A DNA stretch of 59,240 nucleotides from Octopus sinensis (lineage: Eukaryota), in contig NW_021832547.1 of the NCBI RefSeq assembly GCF_006345805.1, positions 1 to 59,240 of the forward strand, written 5' to 3'. Made by a program: the position numbers and the translations under genes. The notes under the pieces are model-generated. The model saw nothing but the letters and a program-made list of their open reading frames with translations, was not told the DNA's origin and ran no database searches. Below, in pieces: positions 1 through 56,223 of this stretch; position 1 is the stretch's first letter, and each line of letters starts with the position of its first letter.

Positions 1-3000
1 AAAATTATTAAAAATTTTGTTCAAACATCGCTATAGAAAATGGGTATAGCTAATATTCAATTGGGTATACAACAAAATTTTACGAAGAATTTGTTATTCT
101 GGGTAACTTTCTGTAAAATTATTAAAATTTTGTTCAAACATCGCTATAGAAAATGGGTTATTAGCTAATATTCAATTGGGTATACAACAAAATTTGACAA
201 TAGAATTGTTATTCTGGGTAACTTTCTGTAAAATTATTAAAATTTTGTTCACACATCGCTATAGAAAATGGGTTATTAGCTAATATTCAATTGGGTATAC
301 AACAAAATTTACGATTAGAATTTATTCTGGGTAACTTTCTGTAAAATTATTAAAATTTTGTTCAAACATCGCTATAGAAAATGGGTTATTAGCTAATATT
401 CAATTGGGTATACAACAAAATTTTACGATAGAATTTATTCTGGGTAACTTTCTGTAAAATTATTAAAATTTTGTTCAAACATCGCTATAGAAAATGGGTT
501 ATTAGCTAATATTCAATTGGGTATACAACAAAATTTTACGATAGAATTTATTCTGGGTAACTTTCTGTAAAATTATTAAAATTTTGTTCAAACATCGCTA
601 TAGAAAATGGGTTATTAGCTAAAATTCAATTGGGTATACAACAAAATTTGATAATAGAATTTGTTATTCTGGGTAACTTTCTGTAAAATTATTAAAATTT
701 TGTTCAAACATCGCTATAGAAAATGGGTTATTAGCTAATATTCAATTGGGTATACAACAAAATTTGACAATAGAATTTGTTATTCTGGGTAACTTTCTGT
801 AAAATTATTAAAATTTTGTTCAAACATCGCTATAGGAAAATGGGTATTAGCTAATATTCATTGGGTATACAACAAAATTTTACAATAGAATTTGTTATTC
901 AGGGTAACTTTCTGTAAAATTATTAAAATTTTGTTCAAACATCGCTATAGAAAATGGGTTATTAGCTAATATTCAATGGGTATACAACAAAATTTTACGA
1001 TAGAATTTGTATTCTGGGTAACTTCTGTAAAATTATTAAAATTATGTTCAAACATCACTATAGAAAATGGATTATTAGCTAATATTCAATTGGGTATACA
1101 ACAAAATTTTACGATAGAATTTGTTATTCTGGGTAACTTTCTGTAAAATTATTAAAATTTTGTTCAAACATCGCTATAGAAAAGGGGTTATTAGCTAATA
1201 TTCAATTGGGTATACAACAAAATTTTACGATAGAATTGTTATTCTGGGTAACTTTCTGTAAAATTATTAAAATTTTGTTCAAACATCGCTATAGAAAATG
1301 GGTTATTAGCTAATATTCAATGGGGTATACAACAAAATTTTACGATAGATTTTTTATTCTTGGGTAACTTTCTGTAAAATTATTAAAATTTTGTTCAAAC
1401 ATCGCTATAGAAAATGGGTTATTAGCTAAAATTCAATTGGGTATACAACAAAATTTGATAATAGAATTTGTTATTCTGGGTAACTTTCTGTAAAATTATT
1501 AAATTTTGTTCAAACATCGCTATAGAAATGGGTTGGTTATTAGCTAATATTCAATGGGTATACAACAAAATTTTACGATAGAATTTGTTATTCTGGGCAA
1601 CTTTCTGAAAAATTATTAAAATTTTTTTTCAAACATCGCTATAGAAAATGGGTTATTAGCTAATATTCAATTGGGTATACAACAAAATTTTACAATAGAA
1701 TTTGTTATTCAGGGTAACTTTCTGTAAAATTATTAAAATTTTGTTCAAACATCGCTATAGAAAATGGGTTATTAGCTAATATTCAATTGGGTATACAACA
1801 AAATTTTACGATAGAATTTATTCTGGGTAACTTTCTGTAAAATTATTAAAATTTTGTTCAAACATCGCTATAGAAAATGGGTTATTAGCTAATATTCAAT
1901 TGGGTATACAACAAAATTTTACGATAGAATTTATTCTGGGTAACTTTCTGTAAAATTATTAAAATTTTGTTCAAACATCGCTATAGAAAATGGGTTATTA
2001 GCTAAAATTCAATTGGGTATACAACAAATTTATAATAGAATTTGTTATTCTGGGTAACTTTCTGTAAAATTATTAAAATTTTGTTCAAACATCGCTATAG
2101 AAAATGGGTTATTAGCTAATAACTTCATTGGGTATACAACAAAATTTGACAATAGAATTTGTTATTCTGGGTAACTTTCTGTAAAATTATTAAAATTTTG
2201 TTCAAACATCGCTATAGAAAATGGGTTATTAGCTAATATCAATTGGGTATACACAAAATTTTACAATAGAATTTGTTATTCTGGTAACTTTCTGTAAAAT
2301 TATTAAAATTTTGTTCAAACATCGCTATAGAAAATGGGTTATTAGCTAATATTCAATTGGGTATACAACAAAATTTTACGATAGAATTTATATTCTGGGT
2401 AACTTTCTGTAAAATTATTAAAATTATGTTCAAACATCGCTATAGAAAATGGATTATTAGCTAATATTCAATTGGGTATACAACAAAATTTTCACGATAA
2501 TTTGTTATTCTGGGTAACTTTCTGTAAAATTATTAAAATTTTGTTCAAACATCGCTATAGAAAATGGGTTATTAGCTAATATTCAATTGGGTATACAACA
2601 AAATTTTACGATAGAATTTGTTATTCTGGGTAACTTTCTGTAAAATTATTAAAATTTGTTCAAACATCGCTATAGAAAATGGGTTGTTAGCTAATATTCA
2701 ATTGGGTATACAAACAATTTTACGATAGAATTTGTTATTCTGGGTAACTTTCTGTAAAATTATTAAAATTTTGTTTCAAACATCGCTATAGAAAATGGGT
2801 TATTAGCTAATATTCAATTGGGTATACAACAACATTTGACAATAGAATTTGTTATTCTGGGTAACTTTCTGTAAAATTATTAAAATTTTGTTCAAACATC
2901 GCTATAGAAAATGGGTTATTAGCTAATATTCAATTGGGTATACAACAAAATTTTACAATAGAATTTGTTATTCTGGCAACTTTCTGTAAAATTATTAAAA

Positions 3001-5413
3001 TTTTGTTCAAACATCGCTATAGAAAATGGGTTATTAGCTAATATTCAATTGGGTATACAACAAAATTTTACAATAGAATTTGTTATTCTGGGTAACTTTC
3101 TGTAAAATTATTAAATTTTGTTCAAAATCGCTATAGAAATGGGTTATTAGCTAATATTCAATTGGGTATACAACAAAATTTTACGATAGAATTTGTTATT
3201 GTGGGTAACTTTCTGTAAAATTATAAAATTTTGTTCAAACACATCGCTATAGAAAATGGGTTATTAGCTAATATTCAATTGGGCATACAACAAAATTTTA
3301 CGATAGAATTTGTTATTCTGGGTAACTTTCTGTAAAATTATTAAAATTTTGTTCAAACATCGCTATAGAAAATGGGTTATTAGCTAATATTCAATTGGTA
3401 TACAACAAAATTTGACAATAGAATTTGTTATTCTGGGTAACTTTCTGTAAAATTATTAAAATTTTGTTCAAACATCGCTATAGAAAATGGGTTATTAGCT
3501 AATATTCAATTGGGTATACAACAAAATTTTACAATAGAATTTGTTATTCAGGGTAACTTTCTGTAAAATTATTAAAATTTTGTTCAAACATCGCTATAGA
3601 AAATGGGTTATTAGCTAATATTCAATTGGGTATACAACAAAATTTTACGATAGAATTTGATATTCTGGGTAACTTTCTGTAAAATTATTAAAATTATGTT
3701 CAAACATCACTATAGAAAATGGGTTATTAGCTAATATTCAATTGGGTATACAACAAAATTTTACGATAGAATTTGTTATTCTGGGTAACTTTCTGTAAAA
3801 TTATTAAAATTTTGTTCAAACATCGCTATAGAAAATGGGTTATTAGCTAATATTCAATTGGGTATACAACAAAATTTTACGATAGAATTTGTTATTCTGG
3901 GTAACTTTCTGTAAAATTATTAAAATTTTGTTCAAACATCGCTATAGAAAATGGGTTATTAGCTAATATTCAATTGGGTATACAACAAAATTTTACGATA
4001 GAATTTGTTATTCTGGGTAACTTTCTGTAAAATTATTAAAATTTTGTTCAAACATCGCTATAGAAAATGGGTTATTAGCTAATATTCAATTGGGTATACA
4101 ACAAAATTTGATAATAGAATTTGTTATTCTGGGTAACTTTCTGTAAAATTATTAAAATTTTGTTCAAACATCGCTATAGAAAATGGGTTATTAGCTAATA
4201 TTCAATTGGGTATACAACAAAATTTTACGATAGAATTTATTTCGGGTAACTTTCTGTAAAATTATTAAAATTTTGTTCAAACATCGCTATAGAAAATGGG
4301 TTATTAGCTAATATTCAATTGGGTATACAACAAAATTTGACAATAGAATTTGTTATTCTGGGTAACTTTCTGTAAAATTATTAAAATTTTGTTCAAACAT
4401 CGCTATAGAAAATGGGTTATTAGCTAATATTCAATTGGGTATACAACAAAATTTTACAATAGAATTTGTTATTCTGGGTAACTTTCTGTAAAATTATTAA
4501 AATTTTGTTCAAACATCGCTATAGAAAATGGGTTGTTAGCTAATATTCAATTGGGTATACAACAAAATTTTACGATAGAATTTGTTATTCTGGGTAACTT
4601 TCTGTAAAATTATTAAAATTTTGTTCAAACATCGCTATAGAAAATGGGTTATTAGCTAATATTCAATTGGGTATACAACAACATTTTACAATAGAATTTG
4701 TTATTCTGGGTAACTTTCTGTAAAATTATTAAAATTTTGTTCAAACATCGCTATAGAAAATGGGTTATTAGCTAATATTCAATTGGGTATACAACAAAAT
4801 TTGACAATAGAATTTGTTATTCTGGGTAACTTTCTGTAAAATTATTAAAATTTTGTTCAAACATCGCTATAGAAAATGGGTTATTAGCTAATATTCAATT
4901 GGGTATACAACAAAATTTTACGATAGAATTTATTCTGGGTAACTTTCTGTAAAATTATTAAAATTTTGTTCAAACATCGCTATAGAAAATGGGTTATTAG
5001 CTAATATTCAATTGGGTATACAACAAAATTTTACGATAGAATTTGTTATTGTGGGTAACTTTCTGTAAAATTATTAATATTTTGTTCAAACATCGCTATA
5101 GAAAATGGGTTATTAGCTAATATTCAATTGGGCATACAACAAAATTTTACGATAGAATTTGTTATTCTGGGTAACTTTCTGTAAAATTATTAAAATTTTG
5201 TTCAAACATTGCTATAGAAAATGGGTTATTAGCCTATATTCAATTGGGTATACAACAAAATTTTACGATAGAATTTGTTATTCTGGGCAACTTTCTGTAA
5301 AATTATTAAAATTTTGTTCAAACATCGCTATAGAAAATGGGTTATTAGCTAATATTCAATTGGGTATACAACAAAATTTTATAATAGAATTTGTTATTCT
5401 GGGTAACTTTCTG
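1..5413. repeat. 116-bp AT-rich satellite, about 46-47 copies, running off the window start
   Basis: Unit AAAATTATTAAAATTTTGTTCAAACATCGCTATAGAAAATGGGTTATTAGCTAATATTCAATTGGGTATACAACAAAATTTTACGATAGAATTTGTTATTCTGGGTAACTTTCTGT. CTGGGTAACT recurs at 3781 and 3897 (period 116). Confidence 0.98.
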
Positions 5414-5720
5414 ATACCCATAATAATATTTATGGCAAAATAGGCCTTATTTTCATTTAAGGTTGTGGGAAATAACAAACTATCCTTTCTTTCGTTTTGT
5501 TTACGTTTAGCGTAACGTTTCGTTTCTGCCGTAATGATTTCAAATGGGCTCATTATAAAAAGTAAATAGAAATAGTCTAAGGCTTTACTCTCCTGAGAAA
5601 GTCTGTGGCTTGATGCAGTTTCTTCAGAAAAATCACCGAAAGAAACAGTTTTTAAATTTTCACTCCATTCAGGTACCAATTCGTTTTCTTTATCGCTGTC
5701 GGATTCACTGTTTTCACTTT
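5388..5720 (-). pseudogene. piggyBac (PGBD/DDE_Tnp_1_7-like) transposase N-terminal fragment
   Basis: Minus frame reads SENSESDSDKENELVPEWSENLK...ALDYFYLLF...FEIITAETKRYAKRKQ...PTTLNENKAYFAINIIMGIRKLPRITN. An acidic leader, an ETxRYA motif and MGIxKLP are typical of the piggyBac N-terminal region. Confidence 0.8.
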
Positions 5721-6029
5721 AATAGCTGCAAACTTGCAAAGACAAAGGAGGAGTAGGGTGATAGCGTCAGTGAAACAATTCGCTCCCTTTGTGTGTGTGT
5801 GCGTTTGCGTGTGGTGTAAACCACATTAAGAAAAACATTTGACATACACACCAGAATGTGAGTTTCCTGTAAATTTTGCTTAATTGGAGGTTAAATTTTA
5901 AAAACTGGACCTGGCATGACCCGATGCATTCTCCTCTTAAAACTGCTAGGTAAATTGTAATTGTAGAAATCCTATATTGTAGATTTTTATAACTTACAAA
6001 GGGAGGCAGATAAAATCTGCCTTTTATAA
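5713..6029 (-). mobile_element. Helitron-like 5' segment (left arm of a palindrome)
   Basis: Reverse complement of 6030-6356 and homologous to 9911-10157. It lacks the terminal bases of the family 5' end. Confidence 0.55.
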
Positions 6030-6356
6030 TCTCTTATTATAAAAGGCAGATTTTATCTGCCTCCCTTTGGGAGTTATAGAAATCTACAATATAGGATTTC
6101 TTCAATTACAATTTACCTAGCATTTTTAGGAGTAGAATGCATCGGGTCATGCCAGGTCCAGTTTTTAAAATTTAAACTCCAATGAAGCAAAATTTACAGA
6201 AAACTCACATTCTGGTGTGTATGTCAAATGCTTTTCTTAATGTGGTTTACACCACACGCACACGCACACACGCAAAAAGGGAGTGATCTCATTCACTCAC
6301 GCTATCACTCATTTCTGCGACTTTCTCTTTGCACGTTTGCAGCGATTAAAGTGAAA
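6030..6356 (+). mobile_element. Helitron-like 5' segment (right arm of a palindrome)
   Basis: Starts A|TCTCTTATTATAAAAGG (5' TC after A, like the other Helitrons here). Internal hairpin GGCAGA-TTTTA-TCTGCC. No 3' end located. Confidence 0.55.
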
Positions 6357-6977: not shown

Positions 6978-7295
6978 TTAACCCTTTCGTTACCAAACCG
7001 CCCGAATTTACCTATTCATATTTAAATGAGAATATCAGAGCAAATCTCTTTAGTACATTCATGAAAACACGTATTATACTTCGTAAACACTTCAACTACA
7101 GTTTTGTACAAAAATCGAAGTGTAATTCTAATTCCGTGAATTATGGGAGATTTTTTTCCAAAATTTGTTCCTATTGTGTTTTCAAAATTTGTAATTCTGA
7201 CAAAAAATGGATACGAATTTCATTATATCAAGCAGCGAGTCAGAATTCGAAGGATTTTCTACTGGAGACCTTCATAAATCTAACTCTATGACTGA
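6978..7295 (+). mobile_element. piggyBac terminus (TTAA target plus TIR), other end not found
   Basis: TTAA at 6978-6981 followed by CCCTTTCGTTACC, the classic TTAA|CCC piggyBac end. Confidence 0.6.
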
Positions 7296-7309
7296 AAAAA
7301 AAAAAAGCA

Positions 7310-7704
7310 TCTTTATATAAGAGTGAAGTTGTGTGTCTGTCTCCTACAATTTAGATTCGTAACTACTCCCACATTTTGCGGTGCAGTTTAACCAAAAGCG
7401 GGTATCTTATAGTCGTGATTCATATCGAGCCCTTCTGGGTATTGGCGTGCGTCTACGATGAGTCTACGATTTAAAAAAAATTTACCATCATATTTTTCCA
7501 TTTTAATGCATTTTTTTCGCTTTTATATAAGGGAAGTAACTCTCTAAAAATATCTACGATGTGTCAACGATTTAAAAAGAAAATTACCTTAATTCTTTTT
7601 CAATTTTTAATGCATTTTTTTGCTATTTTTTGGCTATAACTCTCTAAAAATGCTTATATAGTTATTTCCCTTACAACCCGAGCAACACCGGGCGATACTG
7701 CTAG
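7310..7704 (+). mobile_element. Complete non-autonomous Helitron (H2)
   Basis: 5' A|TCTTTATATAAG; 3' hairpin CCCG-AGCAACAC-CGGG (7677-7692) then CTAG|T; no TSD. Confidence 0.9.
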
Positions 7705-7706
7705 TA

Positions 7707-7707
<1 letters not shown>

Positions 7708-7744
<37 letters not shown>

Positions 7745-7747
7745 GGG

Positions 7748-7813
<66 letters not shown>

Positions 7814-7817
7814 TATA
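7708..7817. repeat. (TA)n microsatellite with one GTATATGGGTATATATAC motif
   Basis: Read directly; motif at about 7739-7756. Confidence 0.97.
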
Positions 7818-8170
7818 CTAGCAGTATCGCCCGGCGTTGCTCGGTTTGTTTCGACCCGCTGGAATGTAATTTTGAAAAGTAAAAATTTTGTGAACATTTT
7901 TCTGGTCAAAATATACCGAAAAGTGGCGACACAGCATTGAAAAAATTGTAAAAAATAGGGATTTTCATAGAAAAAAGCAGCTTTTTGATGTAAATAATTT
8001 TTTGTGTTAACATGGTCCAATTTGAATTTTATGTTCTACGGAAGGAAGAGCAACCCTTCTATCATACTCTCAATTTTGGTCAACTTGCAACGCAGGGTCT
8101 CAGAGGAGATAGTGTTAGTTGAAGGTTACCAAACGTGGTGCACACAGACAACTTCACCTTTATATAGAGA
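7818..8170 (-). mobile_element. Complete non-autonomous Helitron (H3)
   Basis: Minus-strand 5' TCTCTATATAAAGG at 8170; 3' hairpin plus CTAG at 7818-7821, followed by T. Confidence 0.88.
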
Positions 8171-8564
8171 CTAGCAGTATCGCCCGGCGTTGCTCGGGTT
8201 TGTAAGGGAAATAATTATATAAGCATTTTTAGAGATGTAAAGTATAATAGCCATCTCAATATGGCTAACCACAAAGGGGGAGGGGTGTTACTGTAGCGTT
8301 TTACGTTCTGAGATTTAATAATAAATTTTAGAGAGTTACTTCCCCTATATATGTCAAAAATGGATTAAAAATGGGAAAAATTGATGGTAAATTTTTTTTA
8401 AATCGTAGACTGATCGTAGACGCGCGCTAATACCCAGAAGGGCTCGTTATGAATCACGACTATAAGATACCCGGTTTTGGTTAAACTGCACCGCAAAATG
8501 TGGGAGTAGCTAGGAATCTAAATCGTAGGAGACAGACACACAACCTCACTTTTATATATAAAGA
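8171..8564 (-). mobile_element. Complete non-autonomous Helitron (H4, same family as H2)
   Basis: Minus 5' A|TCTTTATATATAAAAGTGAGGTTGTGTGTCTGTCTCC; 3' CCCGAGCAACGCCGGG hairpin plus CTAG at 8171-8174. Confidence 0.9.
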
Positions 8565-8630
8565 TTTCCTCTATTTACATAATATTGAGGTCTCTTTCTT
8601 TCTTTTGTTATCTTACTGTTTTTACCAATA
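8565..8630 (+). mobile_element. Penelope-like terminal fragment
   Basis: Near-identical reverse complement of 33581-33642, which is part of the inverted terminus of the GIY-YIG element. Confidence 0.65.
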
Positions 8631-9910: not shown

Positions 9911-10157
9911 ACTGTGTGTGTGCGTGTGCGTGTGGTGTAAACCACATTAAGAAAAGCATTTGACATACACACCAGAATGTGAGTTTTCTGTAAATTTTGC
10001 TTAATTGGAGTTTAAATTTTAAAAACTGAACCTGGCATGACTCGATGCATTCTACTCTTAAAAATGCTAGGTAAATTGTAATTGAAGAAATCCTATATTG
10101 TAGATTTCTATAACTGACAAAGGGAGGCAGATAAAATCTGCCTTTTATAATAAGAGA
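9911..10157 (-). mobile_element. Helitron-like 5' segment abutting (TA)n (H5)
   Basis: Minus 5' end A|TCTCTTATTATAAAAGGCAG at 10157; homologous to 6030-6270. Confidence 0.6.
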
Positions 10158-12634
<2,477 letters not shown>

Positions 12635-12636
<2 letters not shown>

Positions 12637-15423
12637 CGAGGTAGTCAGAGTAAGTGACAGAATAATTAAGATTAGATTAGTGCTCCACCATAGTTTAGCA
12701 ACTATTATATCGGCCTATGCCCCTCAGCCAGGGCTACCTGATGGACAGAAAGACTGTTTCTATGACACCCTACTGCAGACCACATCATTGACGAACGACA
12801 GGGACCTTCTCTTTGTGGCTGGTGACTTCAATGGGCATGTTGGACGACGTGCTGGGGGCTTCCATGGCGTGCATGGAGGCTACGGTTATGGTTCCCGCAA
12901 CGAGGAGGGAACCAGGCTGCTGGAGTTCTGCGATGCGAATAGTCTTATGATTTGCAACACTAACTTCAGGAAACTGACAAGCCACCTGGTCACCTACCGA
13001 TCGGGCCGGCATACTAGCCAAATCGACTACATCCTTGCCAGAAAAAGGGAAAGATGGCTGCTTATAAATGCCAAAACCTTCCCAGGTGAAGAATGCACCC
13101 CACAACATAGACTGGTAGTTAGTGACTTTAGGATCAGGACTAAGAGGGCGACTAGAAGACGACCAACAGGAGAAGAAGGGTCTGGAAGCTTAAAGACCCT
13201 GCGAATGGACAGAGATTTAGAGATATGTTATTGAAGCTTTAGACGAAATGGAAGGGAGTATAGCTACGCATGGGGTAGAAGACAACTGGACGCTTCTGAG
13301 GGACAACCTGCTGAAAGCCGCTGACCAGATCTGTGGCTGGTGCAAAGTCCCCTAAGACCCAAAATAACGTGGTGGTGGAACAATATTGTTGACAGGGCTA
13401 TTAGACAAAAGAAACAGGCTTGGAAGGCCTGGAAGAACGGTGGTAGCAGGGAAGTGTATCAGTCTGCCAGAAGGGAAGCCAGGAGACAGGTCTATCTAGC
13501 CAGAGGGGAAGCAGAGAAGGAAAAATTTGCCAATGTCCTGCGTCGTGAGGATGAAAGACTTGAGGTATTTCGTGTTGCAAGACAGTGTGTGAGAGAGAAT
13601 CGTGACGTGGTAGGAGAGAAATGTGTTCGCAAGGAGGACGGTTCACTGCACTTAATGAGGTGCAAAGAGAGAGGCTTGGAGACGCCACTATGATAGGTTG
13701 CTGAATGAAGAAAATGAATGGGATAAAGAGAGTCTGCCGAATGTCGACCCAACAGAGGACCAGCAATCCGAGTTAACAGTTCCTTAGTAGATAAGGCAAT
13801 TAGAAGCATGAAAACAGGGAAAGCCCCAGGCCCATCAGGAATTACTGCAGAGATGCTCAAAATATCTGGTGGTGTCGGCTATAGCTTAGTCACCCGTATA
13901 GTTAACCAGGTGATACACGAGGGGGTCATACCCAATGACTGGTGTAGCAGCATAATAGTCAACTGCTACAAAGGTAAAGGCGACGCCCTAGAGACAAATA
14001 ACTACAGGGGCATCAAGCTGCTGGATCAGGTAATGAAGGTTACGGAGAGGGTTGTAGCCCAACTAATTAGAGAGAGAGTTACCTTAGATGATATGCAGTT
14101 TGGGTTCGTGCCAGGGAAAAGTACTACTGATGCTATATTCCTGGTAAGACAGCTGCAGGAGAAATACCTAGCCAAAGATAAGCCCTTGTACCTGGCTTTT
14201 GTTGACTTGGAGAAAGCCTTTGACAGGGTCCCCCGGTCCCTTATCTGGTGGTCAATGAGGAAACTAGGGATAGAAGAATGGTTGGTGAGAGCTGTGCAAG
14301 CCATGTACAGAGACGCTGCTAGTAAGGTGAGGGTTGGCAACGAGTACAGCGAAGAATTCCGGGTAGAGGTTGGGGTCCACCAAGGTTCAGTCCTCAGTCC
14401 CCTCCTATTTATCATAGTCCTCCAGGCAATAACGGAGGAATTCAAGACAGGTTGCCCCTGGGAGCTCCTCTATGCTGATGACCTTGCTCTAATTGCTTAG
14501 TCACTATCAGAACTGGAGGAGAAGTTTCAGGTGTGGAAACAAGGATTAGAATCGAAGGGCCTTAGAATCAACCTAGCCAAAACCAAATCCTAATTAGTAG
14601 GAAGGTAGATCAATCACAAACGCCTTCAGGTAGATGGCCCTGCTCGATCTGTAAAAAAGGTGTAGGTAGAAACTCTATAAGATGCACCAAGTGTAAGCTA
14701 TGGACACATAAGAGGTGCAGCAATGTCAAAGGAAGGCTAACTAGGAAAATAGTTTTTGTCTGTGGCAAATGCTCAGGAGCAATAAACACTGGAAATATGC
14801 AGAGACCAACTTCTGCCACGTTCCAGGGAGACAAACTAGAAGTAGTTGATAGCTTCCGCTACCTAGGAGACCAAGTCAGTAGCGGGGGTGGGTGTGCTGA
14901 AAGTGTAACTGCTAGAGTAAGAATAGCCTGGGCAAAGTTTAGAGAGCTCTTACCCCTGCTGGTGACAAAAGGCCTCTCGCTCAGAGTAAAAGGCAGACTG
15001 TATGATGCATGTGTACGTACAGCCATGCTACATGGTAGTGAAACATGGGCCGTGACTGCTGAGGATATGCGTAAGCTCGCAAGAAATGAAGCCAGTATGC
15101 TCTGATAGATGTGTGATGTCAGTGTTCATAATCGTCAGAGTGTAAGTTCCTTGAGAGAAAAGTTGAACCTAAGAAGCGTCAGTTGTGGCGTGCAAGAGAG
15201 ACGGCTGCGCTGGTATGGTCATGTGACAAGAAAGGCTGAAGATAGTTGTGTGCAAAAGTGCTACACCCTAGCAGTGGAGGGAACCTGTGGAAGAGGTAGA
15301 CCCAGGAAAACCTGGGACGAGGTGGTGAAGCACGACCTTTGAACTTTAGGTCTCACTAAGGAAATGTCTAGAGACCGAGACCTATGGAAGTATGCTGTGC
15401 ATGAGAAGACCCGGCAAGACTAG
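12635..15423 (+). pseudogene. RTE EN-RT ORF with several frameshifts and stops
   Basis: ORF pieces 12680-13234, 13340-13693, 13808-14500, 14797-15105 and 15109-15342. Confidence 0.93.
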
Positions 15424-16910
15424 TCAGGCCATAACCCTGTGGCCCCGACCTGGGACGTAGTCAGTCCTGTGCATACCTTCCTTCTTGTGACACTTATGAA
15501 GACCTGTTGAGGCAAGTGAAAATCAAATCAAATCAAAACAAATCAAAATAGATGAACATCAGTGGAATTGTATTCTTTGTGGTACCAGTGCCGGTGGCAC
15601 ACAAGAAAACCACCCAAACGTGGCCGTAACCAGTACCGCATCGACTGGCCTCCGTGCTGTGGGCACAACAAACACCATCCATCGTGGCCGTTCGCCAGCC
15701 TCATCTGGCACCTGTGCGGTGGCACAAAAGACACCATCCGAAGACCTGGCGACGTAGTCAGTCCACCTGTGCATACCTTCCCTCTTATGACACTTGTGAA
15801 GACCTGTTGAGGCAAGGTGTGACACTTGTGAAGACCTGTTGAGGCAGAGGCAAGTGTGTGACACTTGTGGAGACCTTTTGAGGCAAGTGTGTGACCCTTG
15901 TGAAGACCTGTTGAGGCAAGTGAAAATCAAATCAAACCAAATCAAAATAGATGAATATCAATGGAATTTGTATCTTTGTGGTCCAGTACGGTGGCACACA
16001 AGAAAACCATCCGAACGTGGCCGTAGCTGGTACGGCATCGACTGGCCTCCGTGCTGTGGGCACAACAAACACCATCTGATCGTGGCCGTTCGCCAGCCTC
16101 ACCTGGCACCTGTGTCGGTGGCACATAAAAACACCATCCAAAGACCCGGCGACGTAGTCAGTCCACCTGTGCATACCTTCCCTCTTATGACACTTGTGAA
16201 GACCTGTTGAGGCAGATGCAAGTGTGTGACACTTTGTGAAGACCTGTTGAGGCAGAGGCAAGTGTGTGACAGTTGTGGAGACCTGTTGAGGCAAGTGTGT
16301 GACACGCGTGACACTTGTGAAGACCTGTTGAGGCAAGTGAAAATCAAACCAAATCAAAATAGATGAACATCAATGGAATTTGTATCTTTGTGGTTCCAGT
16401 ACCGGTGGCACACAAGAAAACCATCCGATCGTGGCCGTTCGCCAGCCACATCTGGCACCTGTGTCGGTGGCACATAAAGACACCATCCGAAGACCCGGTG
16501 ACGTAGACAGTCCACCTGTGCATACCTTCCTTCTTGTGACACTTGTGAAGACCTGTTGAGGCAAGTGAAAATCAAATCAAATCAAATCAAAACAATCAAA
16601 ATAGATGAACATAAATGGAATTTGTATCTTTGTGGTACCAGTGCCGGTGGCAAACAAGAAAATCATCCGAACGTGGCCGTAGCCAGTACCGCATAGACTG
16701 GCCTCCGTGCTTTGGGGACGTAACAAACACCATCCGATCGTGGCCGTCCGCCAGCCTCATCTGGCACCTGTGTCGGTGGCACATAAAAACACCATCCGAG
16801 CGTGGCCGTCTGCCAGCCTCGTCTGGCACCTGTGTCGGTGGCACATAAAAACACCATCCGAGCGTGGCCGTTCGCCAGCCTCGTCTGGCACCTGTGTCGG
16901 TGGCACATAA
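15424..16910 (+). repeat. Nested minisatellites in the RTE-1 3' UTR (about 250-400 bp units, with about 30-bp and 62-bp subrepeats)
   Basis: Recurrent AGTGAAAATCAAA, GACACTTGTGAAGACCTGTTGAGGCAAG and GGCACATAAAAACACCATCCGAGCGTGGCCG. Confidence 0.92.
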
Positions 16911-17084
16911 AATCACCCACTACACTCTCGGAGTGGTTGGCGTTAGGAAGGGCATCCAGCTGTAGAAACACTGCCAGATCTGACTGGCCTGGTGCAGCCT
17001 TCGGGCTCCCCAGACCCCAGTTGAACCGTCCAACCCATGCTAGCATGGAAAACGGACGCTAAATGATGATGATGATGATGATGA

Positions 17085-18111
<1,027 letters not shown>

Positions 18112-18139
18112 ATGATTGATTGATTGATTGATTGATTCC

Positions 18140-21100
18140 AGTTTCAGCTCATGAGCTGTGGCCATGCTGAGGCACCGCCATTTGGTGTTGCTACTTGGTT
18201 TCACTTCATGGAGGCTTCTAGCAACTGCTATTTGGTGCATGAGAGAGTTCGATGCAGCTGCCCTCATCTGCCCCTCCTGCCGTGAAGTTGGTTCATCTGG
18301 GACATCTGACAGGAAGAGATCCAGCTCCATTTTAAAGACATCTGTATCCACCCCATGCAGGTCTCTCAGGTTCATCGGGAGGATATTGAAGAGCTGTGGG
18401 CCTCGGAAGCCCAGGCTATCACAGAATCTTGTCCTACATCTTGATGGCAAGTTTGGAGTCCTAGGCACCACGCAGTGGCGCCCAGTTCTGGCGTTTGCGT
18501 AACTCTCGATGCCAAAGTTCAGGACACTTCCCTCCAGGATCTTCCAGATGTATATTATGGCATATCTTTCCCGCCTACGCTCCAGGGAATATAATTTTAA
18601 TCTCTTGAGTCTTTCCCAGTAGCTTCCATTCTGCATAGAGGCTATCTTCTTCGTGTAGCTTCGTTGGATCGCCTCAAGTTCTGTGATCAACTTGACACTG
18701 GATGGTGACCATAGCTGAGAGCAATAGTCAAAGTGACTTAGGACAAGTGTCTACCAGAGGACCATCATGGTTTCTTGTTCTCTTGTTCTAAAGGTTCTAA
18801 GAATCCATCCAGCCAGGCATCTGCATTTCACTGTCAGTTTAGCAACATGTACATGAAAGGTCGCGTCATCACTCATGTGAATACCCAGGTCACGCACTGA
18901 TTGTGCCTCTGGGATTGCAATCCCTCCGGGTCCAGTGTATTCCTTGGGTATTGCATTCAGTTTTGCATGCTGATAGTATAAAGCTTGAAACTTTTCAGCA
19001 TTGAACTGCATGCTATTCTTTTCAGCCCACTGGTAAATTTCGTCCAGCTCATATTGCAGGTGCCTAGTGTCTTCAGGGTTCTGTATTGCCTGTGAAACTT
19101 TTGTATCATCTGCATAACTTGTGATTGTGGCTCTCCGCGTGGCTGAGGGCATGTCTGAGAGGGCCATTATGAACAGTAGTGGTCCCAAAACAGTGCCCTG
19201 TGGAACACCGCTCACTATTTGCGTGCTAATGGAAGTGGCCCCATTGGCTACTACCACCTGACTTCTATTCTTCAGAAAGTCGTGAAGCCATTCTCCTAGT
19301 TTTCCAACTATGCCAAGATCACGCAGTTTGTGACATATCATTCCATGATCGACTTTATCGAAGGCCTTTGCGAAGTCGAGATATATGACTTCCACATTTG
19401 AGTGGTTGAGCAGTTGTTTCAGCACCCAGTCATAGTGCTGCAGGAGCTGAGTTAAGCAGCTTCTTCCTGGTCGGAAACCATGTTGGGGTCAGGCAGCAAG
19501 TCATTTTCTTCAAGGAAGGTGATTAGTTTCCTTCTGACTATTCGTTCCATGACCTTGCTGATGTGTGAGGTCAGAGAGATAGGTCTGTAGTTCTTGGCCT
19601 CCGCTCTGCTACCTCCTTTATGAATAGGGCATATTTACCTTCCTTCAGTTTTCTTGGAAGTTTGCCAGCTGCAAGGAAGCTCTGAAAGAGGAACTGCAGT
19701 GGTCTTGCTAAGACTCTCTTACATACTTTTAGGAGGATTGCCGGGAATCCATCGGGGCCAATAGCTGAGTCTATTTTCATTTCATCTATAGCCTTTATTA
19801 CATCATCTTCCTTTATATCGATGTAATTAACGTCGCCGCCTCTGATTCTATATCTGCAGTGGTAAAAAAGTCAGTTGGATTGCTGATTTGGAAATGCCCA
19901 AGGGGTGGAGTGAAAACACTCTTGAATTGTTCATTCAGTATTTCACTTACCCTCATTGGTTTTCCTGTGAGTGTGCCATCCTTTTCAAGGAGTGGCCCTA
20001 TCCTACAGTGCACCGTATCTGTTTCTTTGGCATACCTGTAGAAAGCTCTGGGGTTAGTTTTTATGTTGTCTATAGCCCAGGCTTCTTTGTCTGCTCTTTC
20101 CTTCTCATGGGAGAGTTGCAGACAATTTTCAATTTCCAACAGTTTTATTTTCAGGCGGGACTTTTCACTGCTTTCAATTTGTTTGTTTAGGCGATTTGAG
20201 ATTTTTGTGCGCCGTCTCATTAAAATTTTTCTCTCTCTGGGGATTTTGTTTTGTTCTTGTGTACAGTGGCCTTTCTCTCTGGGACACATTTGTAGCATAT
20301 GGCTTGCATTACAGACATGAATTGTTGAAGTATCATGTCGATGTCCGGCGAGGAGAGACATTCAGGCCAGTTTTGTTTGAGGATCTCTTTCTCAATTTGT
20401 TTCCAGTTTGCCTTATTGAAGTTCAAGCTGGAAAGACTCTGGGGGTTTCTTGTAGTCTGCATGTCCGTGCTCTCTTTTGGCCCGTACATGGTCAGCTCTA
20501 CCATGTTGTGATCCGAGAGTAGTGTCAGTGTCACTTTCACATTATGGATGAGATCCATATTATTTGTGAAGCAGAGATCCAGTGTGTTACCCGCTCTGGT
20601 TGGTTGGAGTATTACTTGCTCCATGTACAGGGTGTTGGTGAGGTTCAGGAGGGACCTCGCCTGTCCTCGTTCACATCTTGTCATTCCTGGGAGAGAAAGG
20701 CCCTCGGGCCATCTGACATTCGGTAGATTGAAGTCTCCCATGAGAAGTACACTTATGTGTTGTTCTAATGTGGTTAGAACTTCTTCTATTTTTAAAAGGC
20801 AGTCCTCAAACTTGCCCATATGACTTGGGGCATCTGGAGGGCGATATGTAGCACACACAACTACATCAAGTTGCCTTATGTGTACAATTAGTGTGTCACA
20901 CACCGAGTTTGAGTATGACAAAAGGACCTGGGGTGTGAGGTCCCCACGGATGTACATAGCAACTCCTCCATGACTTCTTTCTTTCCTGTCGGTCCGTAGT
21001 ACAACATACTGTGGTATGTGTAATTCGCATCTGCTATGTCCGGTTTCAGATGCGTTTCTGTGAGTGCTATGCATAAGGCTTGATTGCATGCGACAAAGTC

Positions 21101-21816: not shown

Positions 21817-21837
21817 TATATATATATATACATATAC

Positions 21838-21888
<51 letters not shown>

Positions 21889-21922
21889 CATATATATACA
21901 TATATATATATATATACATATA

Positions 21923-21994
<72 letters not shown>

Positions 21995-22085
21995 GGGTAT
22001 ATATACATATATATATATATATTATATATATATATGTATATGGGTATATATACACATATATATATATATTATATATGTATATGGG

Positions 22086-22116
<31 letters not shown>

Positions 22117-22161
22117 GTGTATGGGTATATATACATATATATATATATATATGTATATGGG

Positions 22162-22212
<51 letters not shown>

Positions 22213-22250
22213 GGGTATATATACATATAATTATATATATATATATATAT
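21817..22250. repeat. (TA)n tract with GTATATGGGTATATATAC motifs in its right half
   Basis: Motif copies from 21987 to about 22226. Confidence 0.97.
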
Positions 22251-23083: not shown

Positions 23084-26000
23084 TCACTTGTCCTGCCTAG
23101 TCTTCTCACGTACAGAATATTTCCAAAGGTCTCGGTCTCTGGTCATTTCCTCAGTGAGGCCTAAAGTTCGAAGGTCGTGCTTCACCACCTCGTCCCAGGT
23201 TTTCCTGGGTCTACCTCTCCCACGGGTTCCCTCAACTGCTAGGGATTGGCACTTTCGCACACACCTATCTTCATCCATTCTCGCCACATGACCATACCAG
23301 CGCAATCGTCTCTCTTGCACACCACAACTGATGCTTCTTAGGTACAACATTTCTCTCAAGGTGCTAACGCTCTGGCGAGTATGTACACTGACATTACACA
23401 TCCATCGGAGCATACTGGCTTCATTCCTCACGAGCTTACGCATGTCCTCAGCAGTCACGCCCATGTTTCGCTGCCATGTAGCATGGCTGTTCGTACACAC
23501 GCATCATACAGTCTGCCTTTTACTCTGAGCGAGAGGCCTTTAGTCACCAGCAGAGGTAAGAGCTCCCTAAACTTTGCCCAGGCTATTCTTATTCTAGCAG
23601 TTACACTTTCAGCACACCCACCCCCACTACTGACTTGGTCACCTAGATAACGGAAGCTATCAACTACTTCTAGTTTTTCCCCCTGGGAAGTGACGGAAGT
23701 TGTTTTCTGCAGATTTCCGGAGGTTAATGCTCCCGAGCATCTGCCACATACAAAAACTATCTTCCCAGTTAGCCTACCTTTGACATTGCTGCACCTCTTA
23801 TGTGTCCATAGCTTACACTGGGTACATCTTATAGAGTTTCTACCTACACCTTTTCTACAGATCGAGCAGGGCCATCTTCCTGAAGATATTTGTGGATTGT
23901 CTACCTTTCTACTTATTAGTACTTTGGTTTTAGCTAGGTTGACTCTAAGGCCCCTTGATTTTAAACCCTCCTTCCACACCTGGAACTTCTCCTCCAGTTC
24001 TGATAGTGACTCAGCAATAAGAGCAAGGTCGTCAGCGTAGAGGAGCTCCCAGGGACAGCCTGTCTTGAATTCCTCCGTAATTGCCTGGAGTACTATGATA
24101 AATAGGAGGGGGCTGAGTACTGAACCCTGGTGGACCCCAACCTCTACTTTGAATTCTTCTGTGTACATGTTGCCAACCCTAACCTTACTTACGGCATCTC
24201 TGTACATGGCTTGCACAGTCCTCACCAGCCATTCATCTATCCCTAGTTTCCTCATTGACCACCAGATAAGGGATCGGGGGACCCTATCAAAAGCTTTCTC
24301 CATGTCAACGAAAGCCAGGTACAGGGCTTTCTTTGGCTAGGTATTTCTCCTGCAGCTGCCTTACCAGGAATATAGCATCAGTGGTGCTCTTCCCTGGCAC
24401 GAACCCAAACTGCATCTCATCTAAACTAACTCTCTCTCTAATTAGTTGGGCTATGACCCTCTCCGTAACCTTCATTACTTGATCCAACAGCTTGATACCT
24501 CTGTAATTATTTGTATCTAGGGCATCACCTTTACCTTTGTAGCAGTTGACTAGTATGCTGCTGCACCAGTCATTGGGTATGACTCCTTCGTGTATCACCT
24601 GGTTAACTATACGGGTGACTAGGTTATAGCCGACACTGCCAGATATTTTGAGCATCTCTGCAGTAATTCCTGATGGGCCTGGGGCTTTCCCTGTCTTCAT
24701 GCTTCTAATTGCCTTAGCTACCACGGAACTATCAACTCGGATAGCTGGTCCCTCTGTAGGGTCAACATGCGGCAGACTCTCTTATCCCATTCATTTTCCT
24801 CATTCAGTAACCTTTCATAGTGGCGTCTCCAAGCTTCTCTCTTTGCATCCTCATTTAGCGCAAGTGAACCATCCTCCATGCGAACACATTTCTCTCCTAC
24901 CACATCACGATTCTCTCTCACACACTGTCTTGCAACACGAAATACCTCAAGTCTTCATCCTCACGGCGCAGGACATTGGCAAATTTTCTCTTATCTGCTT
25001 CCCCTCTGGCTAGATAGACCTGTCTCCTAGCTTCCCTTCTGGCAGTCTGATACCCTTCCCTGCTACCACCGTTCTTCCAGGCCTTCCAAGCCTGTTTCTT
25101 TTGTCTAATAGCCCTGTCAACAATATTGTTCCACCACCACGTTATTTTGGGTCTTAAGGGGACTTTGCACCAGCCACAGATCTGGTCAGCGGCTTTCAGC
25201 AGGTTGTCCCTCAGAAACGTCCAGTTGTCTTCTACCCCATGTGTAGCTATACCCCCCTCTATTTCGTCAAAGGCTTCAAGTAACATGTCTCTAAATCTCT
25301 GTCCATTCGCAGGGTCTTTAAGCTTCCAGACCCTTCTTCTCCATGTTGGTCGTCTTCTAGTCGCCCTCTTAGTCCTGATCCTAAAGTCACTAACTACCAG
25401 TCTATGTTGTGGGGTGCATTCTTCGCCTGGGAAGGTTTGGCATTTTTAAGCAGCCATCTTCCCTTTTTCTGGCAAGGATGTAGTCGATTTGGCTAGTATG
25501 CCGGCCCGATCGGTAGGTGACCAGGTGGCTTGTTGGTTTCCTGAAGTTAGTGTTGCAGACCATAAGGCTATTCGCATCGCAGAACTCCAGCAGCCTGGTT
25601 CCCTCCTCGTTGCGGGAACCATAACCGTAGCCTCCATGTACGCCATGGAAGCCCCCAGCATGTCGTCCAACATGCCCATTGAAATCACCAGCCACAAAGA
25701 GAAGGTCCCTGTCGTTCGTCGTTGAGGTGGTCTGCAGTAGGGTGTCATAGAAACTGTCTTTCTGTCCATCGGGTAGCCCTGGCTGAGGGGCATAGGCCGA
25801 TATAATGGTTGCTAATCTATTATGAAGCACTATTCTAATCTTAAGTATTCTGTCACTTACTCTGATTACCTCAATTACTCTATCTATCCATTTCTCAGCG
25901 ATAAGTATACCCACGCCACCAACCCCGTCAGTGTTCCCTGCCCAGAAAATCTTGTACCTGTGTTCCTTGCCTGTGAGGACCCTAGCAGATCCTCCTCTCC

Positions 26001-26199
26001 ACCTTATTTCTTGCATACAACATACATCAACACGTCTCCGTTCAAGCATCTCGACTATCTCGCCAGACCTACCTTTCAATGTGCCAACGTTGAGGGTGCC
26101 TACCCTGAGGGTGCGGGAGGTGTGGGCCTCTGAGACCCTGGGATGAGGGGCCGCAGTGTTCTGTACCTGAAAAGAAAGCTTGCATTTGCCAGATATCAT
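23084..26199 (-). pseudogene. RTE EN-RT-PHD ORF broken by several frameshifts
   Basis: ORF pieces 25402-26199, 24918-25286, 24718-24921, 24305-24724, 23455-24303 and 23084-23500. Confidence 0.92.
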
Positions 26200-27614: not shown

Positions 27615-28725
27615 TTAAATGTAAATTGTTTTTGAAAGTTTCTTGGGCCAATGCACTGTTCTGCCCGATTTTGTAACATACGGTGTGCTCGGGGCACCCG
27701 TTGACGGCGAGGGTGGTGTTGTAGGAGCCGGTGAAGGTGTTTGTGCAGGTGAAGGCGTTTGTGCAGGTGAAGGCGTTTGTGCAGGTGAAGGCGTTTGTGC
27801 AGGTGAAAGTGTTGTTAAAGGTGCATAGGTGGGTGTGTCAAGGTTGTCATCAAAAGATGAAGACGTCTCAAAATGTGCCTTTTTTAAACGGTCCACGGAA
27901 ACGGTCTCCGAACGACCATTTATCTCAATCGTGAAAACCTTTGGTGTGCGAGAAAGCACACGAAAAGGTCCTTTATAGGGAGAAACAAGTGGGCCCTTCA
28001 CAGAATCGTCCCGAACAAAAACATGCGACCAGGTGTTCATATCCGGTGGAAGATGGGACGGTGGAGATTGCTTTCTGGGAAGCATGGGCGGAAGGTTTGA
28101 AAAATATTCCCGCAGTCTGGTGACATAGGTCGCCGGATCATGGGGCGGGGAAGTGTCTGGCACCAACATCGTACCGGGCAATGCCAGTGTGGTACCATAC
28201 AGCAGCTCTGCAGCAGAAAACCCCAGGTCTGCCTTGACAGCAGTCCGACAGCCGAGAAGCACAATGGGCAGAAATTCGATCCAGGACTGTGGGTCCGAAG
28301 AGGCACGAAGAGCGGCCTTGAGCTGTCTATGGAACCGCTCAACCAATCCATTAGACGCTGGATGGTAGCTTGTGGTGTGGATATGGTGCATACCCAAAAT
28401 TCGCGACAATTCGCGAAATAGCGAGGCCTCAAACTGTCGTCCACGATCAGTTGTCAATCGGGACGGGACTCCGAAGCGAGAAATCCAGTTTGAAACGAAA
28501 GCTCGCGCAACAGTCTCAGCAGAAATGTCTGCTATCGGAATGGCTTCTGGCCAGCGGGAGAAACGATCGACACAAGTTAATAGATAAGAGAACCCGCGAC
28601 TCACAGGCCATGGTCCAACCAGATCGATGTGGACATGGCGAAAACGGGCCTCCGTGGGGGGAAATTGTCCAAGCGGGGCACGAACGTGCCGTTGAATTTT
28701 GGATCGTTGACACTTGGAGCAGTTG
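27615..28725 (-). CDS. Gypsy integrase, separated from pol by one frameshift
   Basis: HIDLVGP...[38 protein letters not shown]-like YKGPF and C-terminal YVTKSGRTV. Confidence 0.9.
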
Positions 28726-33290: not shown

Positions 33291-33573
33291 CTTCGGGGTT
33301 CGATTAAAACATAATATAAATAGGAGAGAGAGAGAGAATATTGTAGTGAATTCTGGGGATGGAATAACAACGGGATGACACTGAAATTAAAGGAGGAATT
33401 TAAAATGCATGACAGACAGGAAGCCATGCATACAAGATGGCGAAACAAATAATAGAGAAACGGGATTTAGGGTTATGAATCAACGCTTAAAAAATGAATA
33501 TGAATGACAGGTTGTAAGTTAAATTCGCTTAGCTGGTCATTTTTCGAGTCAGTGTTTTGTCAGCAAGATGTAT
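33222..33573. repeat. 352-bp direct repeat, copy 2
   Basis: Matches 26463-26814 and ends at a short TA/TG tract. Confidence 0.95.
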
Positions 33574-56018: not shown

Positions 56019-56051
56019 GCGGACGTTAAACGATGATGATGATGATGATGA
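56019..56051 (+). mobile_element. Ultra-short RTE 3' tail inside (TA)n
   Basis: GCGGACGTTAAAC(GAT)n matches the RTE-3 terminus CGGACGTTAAACGATGAT. Confidence 0.8.
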
Positions 56052-56223
56052 TATATATATATATATATATATAGTACGTTTAAATATACATACATATGAC
56101 CATTCCGAAATATAACAATATATATATATATATATTTACATATATATAAATATTTACATATATATATATATGTACATATATATATATATATAATATATAT
56201 ATATATGTGTATATATATATATG

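What the first reader, a model, noticed from the sequence alone, without database searches (positions are those of the whole stretch)
1..5720. Satellite array appears to start inside a piggyBac transposase ORF
The last satellite unit runs without any spacer into the piggyBac frame. On the minus strand, AINIIMG-IRKLPRITN is a good piggyBac motif, and about 25 nt encoding RKLPRITN are also part of every 116-bp unit (AATTTGTTATTCTGGGTAACTTTCTG). At least part of the monomer therefore looks transposase-derived, and the array replaces the downstream DDD core. The origin of the other ~90 nt is unresolved.
Basis: partly seen in the sequence, partly recalled or inferred. Interest (0 to 1): 0.7.

Follow-up and report, generated by a model that had tools for sequence, protein, structure and literature searches.

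The report
Satellite born from a broken piggyBac
A 116-bp satellite array in an octopus genome was made by repeatedly copying a short piece of a crippled piggyBac transposon, a clean but ordinary example of a jumping gene turning into satellite DNA.

Summary
Window 1-5413 is an open-ended array of 47 units of 116 bp (about 95% alike). It runs without a spacer into a minus-strand piggyBac transposase N-terminal fragment (5414-5720; Pfam DDE_Tnp_1_7 positions 2-58 of 349).

The unresolved ~90 nt is now explained. An Octopus sinensis locus (L001) holds a decayed near-full-length copy of the same piggyBac family. There the KLPRITN codons and a 92-nt stretch of the 3' non-coding region lie 1.5 kb apart.

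The same locus also holds a 1.07-kb TTAA-flanked deletion derivative. In it, these two pieces are fused exactly as in the satellite unit, but in a single copy.

So the unit is 25 nt of coding sequence plus 91 nt of 3' UTR, spanning an internal-deletion junction. The DDD core was lost by that earlier deletion, not displaced by the array. The array then grew by tandem amplification.

In the window the element is also rearranged: its 5' end (TTAA plus inverted repeat at 6978) lies inverted, 1.26 kb away.

Satellites derived from transposable elements are well known, so this is a new member of a known kind. Genome-wide distribution and the far end of the array could not be tested.

The parts
1..5413 (-). 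Array of the 116-bp satellite: 47 units, open-ended at the left edge of the window, in the same orientation as the piggyBac ORF (minus strand). Each unit is 25 nt of transposase coding sequence (codons for (R)KLPRITN) plus 91 nt of piggyBac 3' non-coding sequence.
   Evidence: TRF. Unit alignment including the single-copy L001 progenitor. Junction comparisons. Lag and variant analysis.
5389..5413 (-). The coding-derived 25 nt (CAGAAAGTTACCCAGAATAACAAAT on the minus strand) in the unit next to the ORF. Here it is still in frame with the ORF. The same 25 nt recur in every unit.
   Evidence: The homologous codons in the near-full-length copy are at L001 10102-10126.
5414..5720 (-). N-terminal fragment of the piggyBac transposase ORF, equal to positions 413-~720 of the 1.07-kb deletion derivative. 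The frame stays open from the stop codon at 5721-5723 to a stop inside the first satellite unit (5356-5358).
   Evidence: Pfam DDE_Tnp_1_7 2-58/349. Protein hits P0001 at E 1.8e-13 and P0002 at E 2e-11. 91% nucleotide identity to L001 6010-6431 across the junction.
5712..6356 (.). Near-perfect palindrome with arms 5712-6030 and 6036-6356, built from an unrelated dispersed repeat. Its left arm ends in AAAGTGAAA, 9 nt that are shared with the piggyBac sequence at the breakpoint.
   Evidence: the repeat finder I1 and I3. A single half-copy lies at L001 12469-12716, 95-96% identical to each arm.
6978..7309 (+). TTAA target site (6978-6981), 5' terminal inverted repeat CCCTTTCGTTAC (6982-6993), 5' UTR and the first 34 codons (ATG at 7207, MDTNFIISSSESEFEGFS...) of a piggyBac of the same family. 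This corresponds to element positions 1-371. It lies on the opposite strand from the ORF fragment and the array.
   Evidence: Exact TIR match, the only one in the window. 95.9% identity to L001 5653-5968. Sequence.
7310..8565 (.). Unrelated element with ~220-nt terminal inverted repeats that abuts the truncated piggyBac 5' part. piggyBac sequence does not resume after it. Boundaries are approximate.
   Evidence: the repeat finder I1, arms 7293-7516 and 8356-8579, 88%. Sequence.

Best explanation
The array is a transposon-derived satellite. It arose by tandem amplification of a 116-bp segment that spans the internal-deletion junction of a non-autonomous piggyBac element.

Step 1 (shown). The octopus lineage carried an autonomous PGBD4-like piggyBac of about 2.57 kb, with TTAA target sites, 12-nt inverted repeats CCCTTTCGTTAC, a DDE_Tnp_1_7 domain and a C-terminal zinc finger.

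Step 2 (product shown, mechanism inferred). A 1,511-bp internal deletion with 2 nt of microhomology joined the codon after KLPRITN to a point 333 nt downstream of the stop codon. This gave a 1.07-kb derivative without the catalytic core. The likely cause is abortive gap repair after excision.

Step 3 (inferred). That derivative was copied to new sites. The inference rests on the same junction occurring at two unrelated loci.

Step 4 (array shown, mechanism inferred). In one copy, a 116-bp piece was duplicated head to tail: 25 nt of coding sequence plus 91 nt of 3' UTR. The unit-to-unit join is TTTTA|CAGAAAG, with no microhomology. Unequal exchange or replication slippage then expanded it to at least 47 units, including duplications of multi-unit blocks.

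Step 5 (arrangement shown, cause inferred). The host element was later broken between element positions 371 and 413. Its 5' end now lies inverted, 1.26 kb away.

The array most likely has no sequence-specific function. It is neutral or heterochromatic repeat DNA that is undergoing CpG decay.
For: 1. The single-copy progenitor exists. L001 5602-6672 is flanked by TTAA on both sides and has matching inverted repeats. After ...GGTATCAGAAAGTTACCCAGAATAACAAAT it reads TCTATCGTAAAATTTTGTTG..., which is exactly one satellite unit. It is 98.2% identical to the consensus over 109 nt, and 91% identical to window 5305-5720 across the junction.

2. In the near-full-length copy (L001 9397-11966) the two parts of the unit are separate. 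The conceptual ORF hits DDE_Tnp_1_7 at 2-347/349 with E 6.9e-68, plus zf-Tnp_2. The coding 25 nt lie at 10102-10126, and 92 nt of 3' UTR lie at 11638-11729. That second stretch is 333 nt after the stop codon and 237 nt before the 3' end.

3. The 92-nt segment is present in all four 3' ends in L001. It carries the same subfamily-diagnostic differences as the sequence downstream of it: between the subfamilies, 75-87% identity in the segment against 79-82% downstream. It is therefore an integral part of the element.

4. KLPRI(T/S)NYWS is conserved in relatives, so the 25 nt are ancestral coding sequence.

5. The array consensus shares the diagnostic bases of the deletion-derivative lineage: ATCG, TTGTTG and TAGCG.

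6. Blocks of units recur: units 4-11 resemble 16-23, 7-10 resemble 30-33, and 28-29 resemble 44-45. Identity rises slightly at lags 12 and 23. This fits growth by unequal exchange.

7. The flanks of the window copy and the L001 copy are unrelated, so the two loci are different.
Against: Only two loci carrying the deletion junction could be examined. The far (left) end of the array lies outside the window, so it is not shown that the array is followed by the remaining 237 nt of the 3' end and a 3' inverted repeat.

Genome-wide distribution of the unit could not be tested. The window's source assembly is not on record, a peptide search with the satellite translation found nothing, and a metagenome DNA scan found nothing.

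The amplification mechanism (unequal exchange, slippage or rolling circle) is not distinguished by the data. The claim that the plus-strand 5' part and the minus-strand ORF fragment once formed one element rests only on their nearly adjacent break coordinates (371 and 413). Some differences between units are 1-nt homopolymer indels that could be sequencing errors.
Confidence: 0.85

Rival explanations
1. An independent, pre-existing satellite happens to abut (or invaded) a piggyBac ORF. On this view the shared ~25 nt are chance microhomology at the junction.
For: Only the bare observation that the homology visible inside the window is limited to ~25 nt.
Against: The same junction exists as a single copy inside a TTAA-flanked element in another genome. 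The remaining 91 nt are piggyBac 3' UTR. The 26-mer has a chance expectation of 0.00 in the window.
Confidence: 0.02
2. The direction is reversed. An old satellite came first and the piggyBac family captured one monomer into its 3' UTR, so the array in the window is a remnant of that ancestral satellite.
For: The 92-nt segment is non-coding and its deeper origin is unknown. Transposons are known to carry satellite-like repeats (review PMC6947457).
Against: The unit contains 25 nt of conserved transposase coding sequence and a deletion junction specific to one derivative lineage. The 116-bp unit as it stands therefore cannot predate that deletion. The 92-nt segment co-diverges with the rest of the 3' end in two subfamilies.
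Confidence: 0.04
3. The source sequence is the same, but the amplification route differs. A 116-bp (or multimeric) extrachromosomal circle excised from the deletion derivative was copied by rolling-circle replication. It then re-entered at its homologous site, or the initial duplication arose by template switching during repair of a transposase-induced break.
For: The first unit-to-unit join has no microhomology, which fits end joining or circularisation better than slippage. The array sits exactly in register within the element.
Against: The block duplications and the weak lag-12/23 signal are what unequal exchange produces. No circle or intermediate has been observed. The data do not discriminate between the routes.
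Confidence: 0.2
4. Assembly artefact. The array, or its junction with the ORF fragment and the palindrome, was produced by misassembly of long reads.
For: Many 1-nt homopolymer indels between units. A palindrome lies next to the junction.
Against: Units carry shared, structured variants and CpG-decay variants. The palindrome arms differ by 7% and each is closer to a copy in another genome, so they are old copies and not a chimeric read. The array-ORF junction is reproduced independently in L001.
Confidence: 0.03

Closest known systems
Satellite DNAs derived from MITEs or non-autonomous DNA transposons, as listed in review PMC6947457: oyster HindIII satDNA, bivalve BIV160, Xenopus Xstir, Drosophila SGM
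   Same: A short internal part of a non-autonomous cut-and-paste element is tandemly amplified into an array, while single copies of the unit persist inside dispersed elements.
   Different: Here the parent is a piggyBac. The unit spans an internal-deletion junction and carries 25 nt of recognisable transposase coding sequence. That fixes the order of events: deletion first, amplification second.
Coral CMITE tandem arrays linked to piggyBac-like transposons (Wang et al. 2010, PMC2872659)
   Same: Non-autonomous elements related to piggyBac are found in tandem arrays, attributed to replication slippage rather than transposition.
   Different: In corals whole MITEs, with their ends, are repeated, and the origin of the internal region is unknown. 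Here only a 116-bp internal segment is repeated and both of its source segments are identified. L001 9393-9396 does show a CMITE-like head-to-tail pair of elements sharing one TTAA.
Satellites arising from retrotransposon untranslated regions, such as PisTR-A from the 3' UTR of the pea Ogre element (listed in PMC6947457)
   Same: A tandem array originates in the non-coding 3' region of a transposable element.
   Different: Different class of element. The octopus unit additionally includes coding sequence brought in by a deletion.
PGBD4-like piggyBac transposases of molluscs (for example Ostrea edulis 'piggyBac transposable element-derived protein 4-like', P0005)
   Same: 50-54% amino-acid identity to the conceptual octopus transposase over its full length. 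The MGI[RK]xLPxIxNYWS motif is shared.
   Different: Those are intact ORFs. No intact octopus copy of this family was found in the protein collection. The window holds only the first ~140 codons, split over two strands.

Membership tests
piggyBac superfamily (element as a whole) | Transposase with a DDE_Tnp_1_7 (PF13843) domain | tested here: met
   The window ORF fragment scores 24.2 bits against a cut-off of 22.4, covering profile positions 2-58 of 349. The family's near-full-length copy in L001 covers 2-347 of 349 at E 6.9e-68.
piggyBac superfamily (element as a whole) | TTAA target-site duplication and short terminal inverted repeats beginning CCC | tested here: met
   Window 6978-6993 reads TTAA|CCCTTTCGTTAC. 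The L001 copies have TTAA on both sides and ...GTAACGAAAGGG|TTAA at the 3' end. The 3' end of the window copy is not in the window.
piggyBac superfamily (element as a whole) | C-terminal cysteine-rich zinc finger | tested here: inconclusive
   The L001 conceptual ORF hits zf-Tnp_2 at 23.5 bits, just under the cut-off of 24, E 8.2e-5. The finger is absent from the window copy.
Autonomous (functional) piggyBac | Intact ORF containing the catalytic DDD core | tested here: not met
   No sequence beyond codon ...KLPRITN exists anywhere in the window. The L001 reference copy has several stops and frameshifts. No protein closer than ~54% identity to the conceptual ORF was listed in the collection, apart from the short fragments P0001 and P0002.
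Non-autonomous internal-deletion derivative of a DNA transposon | Both ends of the parent retained, internal coding region deleted at a defined junction, and the same junction present at more than one locus | tested here: met
   L001 5602-6672 has both ends plus a 1,511-bp deletion. The window carries the same junction with unrelated flanks. Only two loci were available.
Satellite DNA | Long head-to-tail array of a unit longer than about 100 bp | tested here: met
   47 units of 116 bp, at least 5.4 kb, open-ended.
Satellite DNA | High genomic abundance, multiple arrays, heterochromatic or centromeric location | not testable with these tools
   No octopus genome can be searched at the DNA level here. 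Indirect searches found nothing.
TE-derived satellite | The unit is homologous to a contiguous part of a dispersed element that also exists unamplified | tested here: met
   The single-copy unit in L001 6325-6431 is 98.2% identical to the consensus.

The most novel reading that the evidence does not exclude
The array still lies inside a non-autonomous piggyBac bounded by inverted repeats, or did so until recently. That element could be mobilised in trans, so transposition would seed copies of the 116-bp satellite across octopus chromosomes, a piggyBac counterpart of satellite-carrying Helentrons or Tetris. This could be the origin of a major, possibly pericentromeric, octopus satellite.
Probability: 0.15. 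Interest if true: 0.6.

Novelty: new member of a known kind. Interest (0 to 1): 0.35.

Why it matters
This is an unusually legible example of how a satellite is born. Every nucleotide of the 116-bp unit can be traced to two places in a piggyBac element. The unit also straddles a deletion junction, which fixes the order of events: deletion, then spread of the derivative, then tandem amplification, then rearrangement.

It adds a piggyBac case, and a cephalopod case, to the list of transposon-derived satellites. It also gives concrete diagnostic sequences for surveying octopus assemblies: the deletion junction and the unit-to-unit junction.

It flags the O. sinensis gene model LOC118764908 as a decayed transposon and not a host gene. 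It does not reveal a new mechanism.

Tried and rejected
1. My first impression was that the whole unit might be frameshifted coding sequence downstream of KLPRITN, because ...AMFEQNFNNF loosely resembles ...RFEQILRFLHF of other piggyBacs. I rejected this. Family members read YWSSDKPFGDEYVSSIMTRTRFLKL there, and the 91 nt match the 3' UTR instead.

2. I tried to reach beyond the left edge of the window by looking up window ORFs in the assembly index (65-aa and 107-aa versions of the fragment, plus a 296-aa and an 829-aa ORF). None is on record.

3. I searched the protein collection with translations of the satellite on both strands to find other arrays. There were 360 word candidates and none was significant.

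4. An exact-match DNA scan of the metagenome collection with a 24-mer from the unit gave 0 hits.

5. I looked for intact octopus members of the family. The best full-length hits are bivalve proteins at 50-54% identity.

6. I looked for a strict higher-order repeat, since TRF also reports period 461. Only a weak lag-12/23 signal and patchy block duplications appeared, so there is no regular higher-order repeat.

7. I considered the palindrome as a fresh fold-back duplication or a read-chimera artefact. I rejected this because the arms are 93% alike but each is 95-96% identical to a copy in L001.

8. Literature searches for an octopus or cephalopod satellite linked to piggyBac found none in the held library.
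Full report
**What is in the window**

Tandem Repeats Finder reports one array from base 1 to 5413, with a 116-bp period, 47.0 copies and 95% matches. My own segmentation gives 47 units of 111-118 bp with mean pairwise identity 94.8%. The array starts at base 1, so its true length and far end are unknown.

Directly after the last unit, the minus strand carries an open frame from 5720 down to a stop at 5356-5358. It reads SENSESDSDKENELVPEWSENLKTVSFGDFSEETASSHRLSQESKALDYFYLLFIMSPFEIITAETKRYAKRKQNERKDSLLFPTTLNENKAYFAINIIMGIRKLPRITN, and then SIIKFCCIPN* inside the first unit. Pfam places residues 46-108 on DDE_Tnp_1_7 profile positions 2-58 of 349, with E 2.5e-5 and 24.2 bits against a cut-off of 22.4.

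The remaining units carry it with small indels.

**Is KLPRITN a family motif?**

A protein search with the fragment returned two relatives. P0002 is Octopus sinensis LOC118764908. P0001 comes from a Logan contig of run SRR11869390. Both read ...AINIIMGIR(K/N)LPRITNYW(S/N)SD(K/E)(P/R)FGDEYVSSIMTRTRF....

Intact PGBD4-like transposases of bivalves and gastropods, at 50-54% identity to the conceptual octopus protein, conserve MGI[RK]xLPxIxNYWS at the same place. The window frame follows the family up to ...RITN and departs exactly where relatives read YW.

**Where the other ~90 nt come from**

The DNA around P0002 is locus L001: O. sinensis CM016867.1, 91.46 Mb, 21.7 kb. It contains several copies of this piggyBac family.

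*Near-full-length copy, L001 9397-11966.* It is flanked by TTAA on both sides and has ends CCCTTTCGTTAC...GTAACGAAAGGG. Its ORF is decayed by stops and frameshifts. Conceptually it covers DDE_Tnp_1_7 positions 2-347 of 349 (E 6.9e-68) plus the C-terminal zinc finger. In this copy:
- The codons (R)KLPRITN lie at 10102-10126.
- The stop codon is at 11302-11304.
- A 92-nt stretch matching the rest of the satellite unit lies at 11638-11729. That is 333 nt after the stop and 237 nt before the 3' end.

*Deletion derivative, L001 5602-6672.* This is a 1.07-kb derivative with both ends and both TTAAs. In it...CCCAGAATAACAAAT is joined directly to TCTATCGTAAAATTTTG.... The deletion is 1,511 bp, with a 2-nt (TT) overlap at the join. 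The fused segment is one 'unit' in single copy. It is 98.2% identical to the satellite consensus over 109 nt. The whole stretch L001 6010-6431 is 91% identical to window 5720-5305 across the junction.

The 116-bp unit is therefore 25 nt of coding sequence plus 91 nt of 3' UTR, brought together by that deletion. Its repeat boundary is TTTTA|CAGAAAG, where the progenitor reads TTTTA|TATTTTG on one side and GGGTAT|CAGAAAG on the other.

**Direction of derivation**

The 92-nt segment is present in all four piggyBac 3' ends in L001, including two copies of a second, more diverged subfamily with a different internal deletion. It shows the same subfamily-diagnostic substitutions as the 240 nt downstream of it. 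It is therefore an integral part of the element and not a captured satellite unit. The unit also contains conserved coding sequence and a lineage-specific deletion junction. Together these facts mean the array must postdate the deletion.

The array consensus carries the bases diagnostic of the deletion-derivative lineage (ATCG, TTGTTG, TAGCG). It lacks a private 6-nt deletion of the L001 copy.

**How the array grew**

There is no strict higher-order repeat, although TRF scores period 461 about equally. Average identity rises only slightly at lags 12 and 23: 0.955 and 0.954 against about 0.948. Runs of diagnostic variants do recur: units 4-11 resemble 16-23, units 7-10 resemble 30-33, and units 28-29 resemble 44-45. 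This is what unequal exchange of multi-unit blocks produces.

The commonest variants sit on the single CpG next to the deletion junction. ACGAT has become ACAAT in 22 units, consistent with CpG decay. About a third of the differences are 1-3-nt indels, and some of these may be sequencing errors.

The first duplication has no microhomology. End joining, template switching or a circular intermediate are all possible, and this step is inference.

**State of the host element in the window**

BLAST of the L001 elements against the window finds only two pieces outside the array.
- Element positions 56-371 lie on the plus strand at 6989-7304. They are preceded by the only TTAA|CCCTTTCGTTAC in the window, at 6978-6993. 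The ATG is at 7207 (MDTNFIISSSESEFEGFS...).
- Element positions 413-834 lie on the minus strand at 5720-5305.

In L001 these parts are adjacent and collinear. In the window they face away from each other, 1.26 kb apart. The nearly abutting break coordinates suggest one element split by an inversion, but two independent truncated copies cannot be excluded.

The intervening DNA begins with a 645-bp palindrome, with arms 5712-6030 and 6036-6356 that are 93% complementary. It is built from a dispersed repeat that occurs as a single half-copy at L001 12469-12716. Each arm is closer to that copy (95-96%) than to the other arm, so the palindrome is neither a fresh fold-back nor a read chimera. Its left arm ends in AAAGTGAAA, which it shares with the piggyBac sequence at the breakpoint, a 9-nt microhomology.

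On the other side, the piggyBac 5' part stops at about 7309 against an unrelated element with ~220-nt inverted repeats. The element's last 237 nt and 3' inverted repeat are not in the window.

**What could not be tested**

- The window's source is not on record.
- The satellite translation finds no proteins.
- A DNA scan of metagenomes found nothing.

What can be said is limited. In the only other octopus DNA available (21.7 kb), all four occurrences of the segment lie inside piggyBac 3' ends, and none is tandem.

**Comparison with what is known**

Conversion of transposable elements into satellites is well documented. The review PMC6947457 lists MITE-derived satellites in oysters, other bivalves, Xenopus and Drosophila, and UTR-derived satellites of retroelements. 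MITEs related to piggyBac that form tandem arrays were described in corals and attributed to slippage (PMC2872659).

The present case differs in three details. The parent is a piggyBac deletion derivative. Only an internal 116-bp piece is amplified. That piece spans the deletion junction and contains recognisable coding sequence. No paper in the held library describes an octopus satellite of this origin, but that library is incomplete.

**Verdict**

The DDD core was lost by a prior deletion.

This is a new member of a known kind, of moderate-to-low interest. It is a tidy, fully traceable birth of a satellite and not a new mechanism. Confidence in the origin is 0.85. The amplification mechanism, the mobility of the derivative and the inversion are inferred.

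Noticed in passing
window 40639-47568: A second, unrelated satellite with a 155-bp unit, about 45 copies, 96% matches. It sits between an (AT)n tract and a LINE-like ORF. Its origin was not examined.
   Followed up: no
window 5712-6356: A 645-bp near-perfect palindrome (arms 93% complementary, 5-nt centre) made of a dispersed repeat that occurs as a half-copy at L001 12469-12716. It shares 9 nt (AAAGTGAAA) with piggyBac at the breakpoint.
   Followed up: partly
window 7310-8565: An unrelated element with ~220-nt terminal inverted repeats (88%) and an internal (AT)n tract. It abuts the truncated piggyBac 5' part, and related sequence lies at L001 14799-15090.
   Followed up: partly
window 10157-12636; 17084-18110; 21817-22250; 56051-56792: Very long imperfect (AT)n dinucleotide tracts, the largest 2.5 kb. 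GC content drops to 13% in 10-12 kb.
   Followed up: no
window 16725-16917; 37532-37886; 51021-51300: Short tandem arrays of a 62-66-bp unit sharing the core GTGCCGGTGGCACATAAAAGCACC. They may be tails of SINE-like elements.
   Followed up: no
window 32382-33342: A tandem repeat with a 163-bp unit, 5.9 copies, 97% matches.
   Followed up: no
window 12680-14500 (+), 18028-21089 (-), 23084-26199 (-), 27615-30930 (-), 48464-50953 (+): Long ORFs with the look of retroelement proteins. They include LINE-type endonuclease/reverse transcriptase ORFs (one of 829 aa) and an LTR-type pol of 804 aa with an adjacent integrase-like ORF of 329 aa. The window is almost entirely repeats. These assignments are by eye and were not run against Pfam.
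   Followed up: no
L001 9380-9410: The 3' end of one piggyBac deletion derivative and the 5' end of the near-full-length copy share a single TTAA (…GTAACGAAAAGG-TTAA-CCCTTTCGTTACC…). This is a head-to-tail pair like the coral CMITE arrays.
   Followed up: partly
L001 10001-11670: The O. sinensis gene model LOC118764908 (P0002, 184 aa) is a decayed piggyBac ORF. Its predicted last exon (...NSSIVKFCCIPN*) is 3' UTR sequence, the same segment that forms the satellite unit. This is an annotation artefact and not a host gene.
   Followed up: yes
window 1-5413, unit positions around ...TTTTACGATAG...: The commonest unit variants sit at the single CpG beside the deletion junction (CG to CA in 22 of 46 units, plus TG variants). 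This suggests the array has been methylated. Units 31-47, nearest the ORF, are more uniform than units 1-30.
   Followed up: partly
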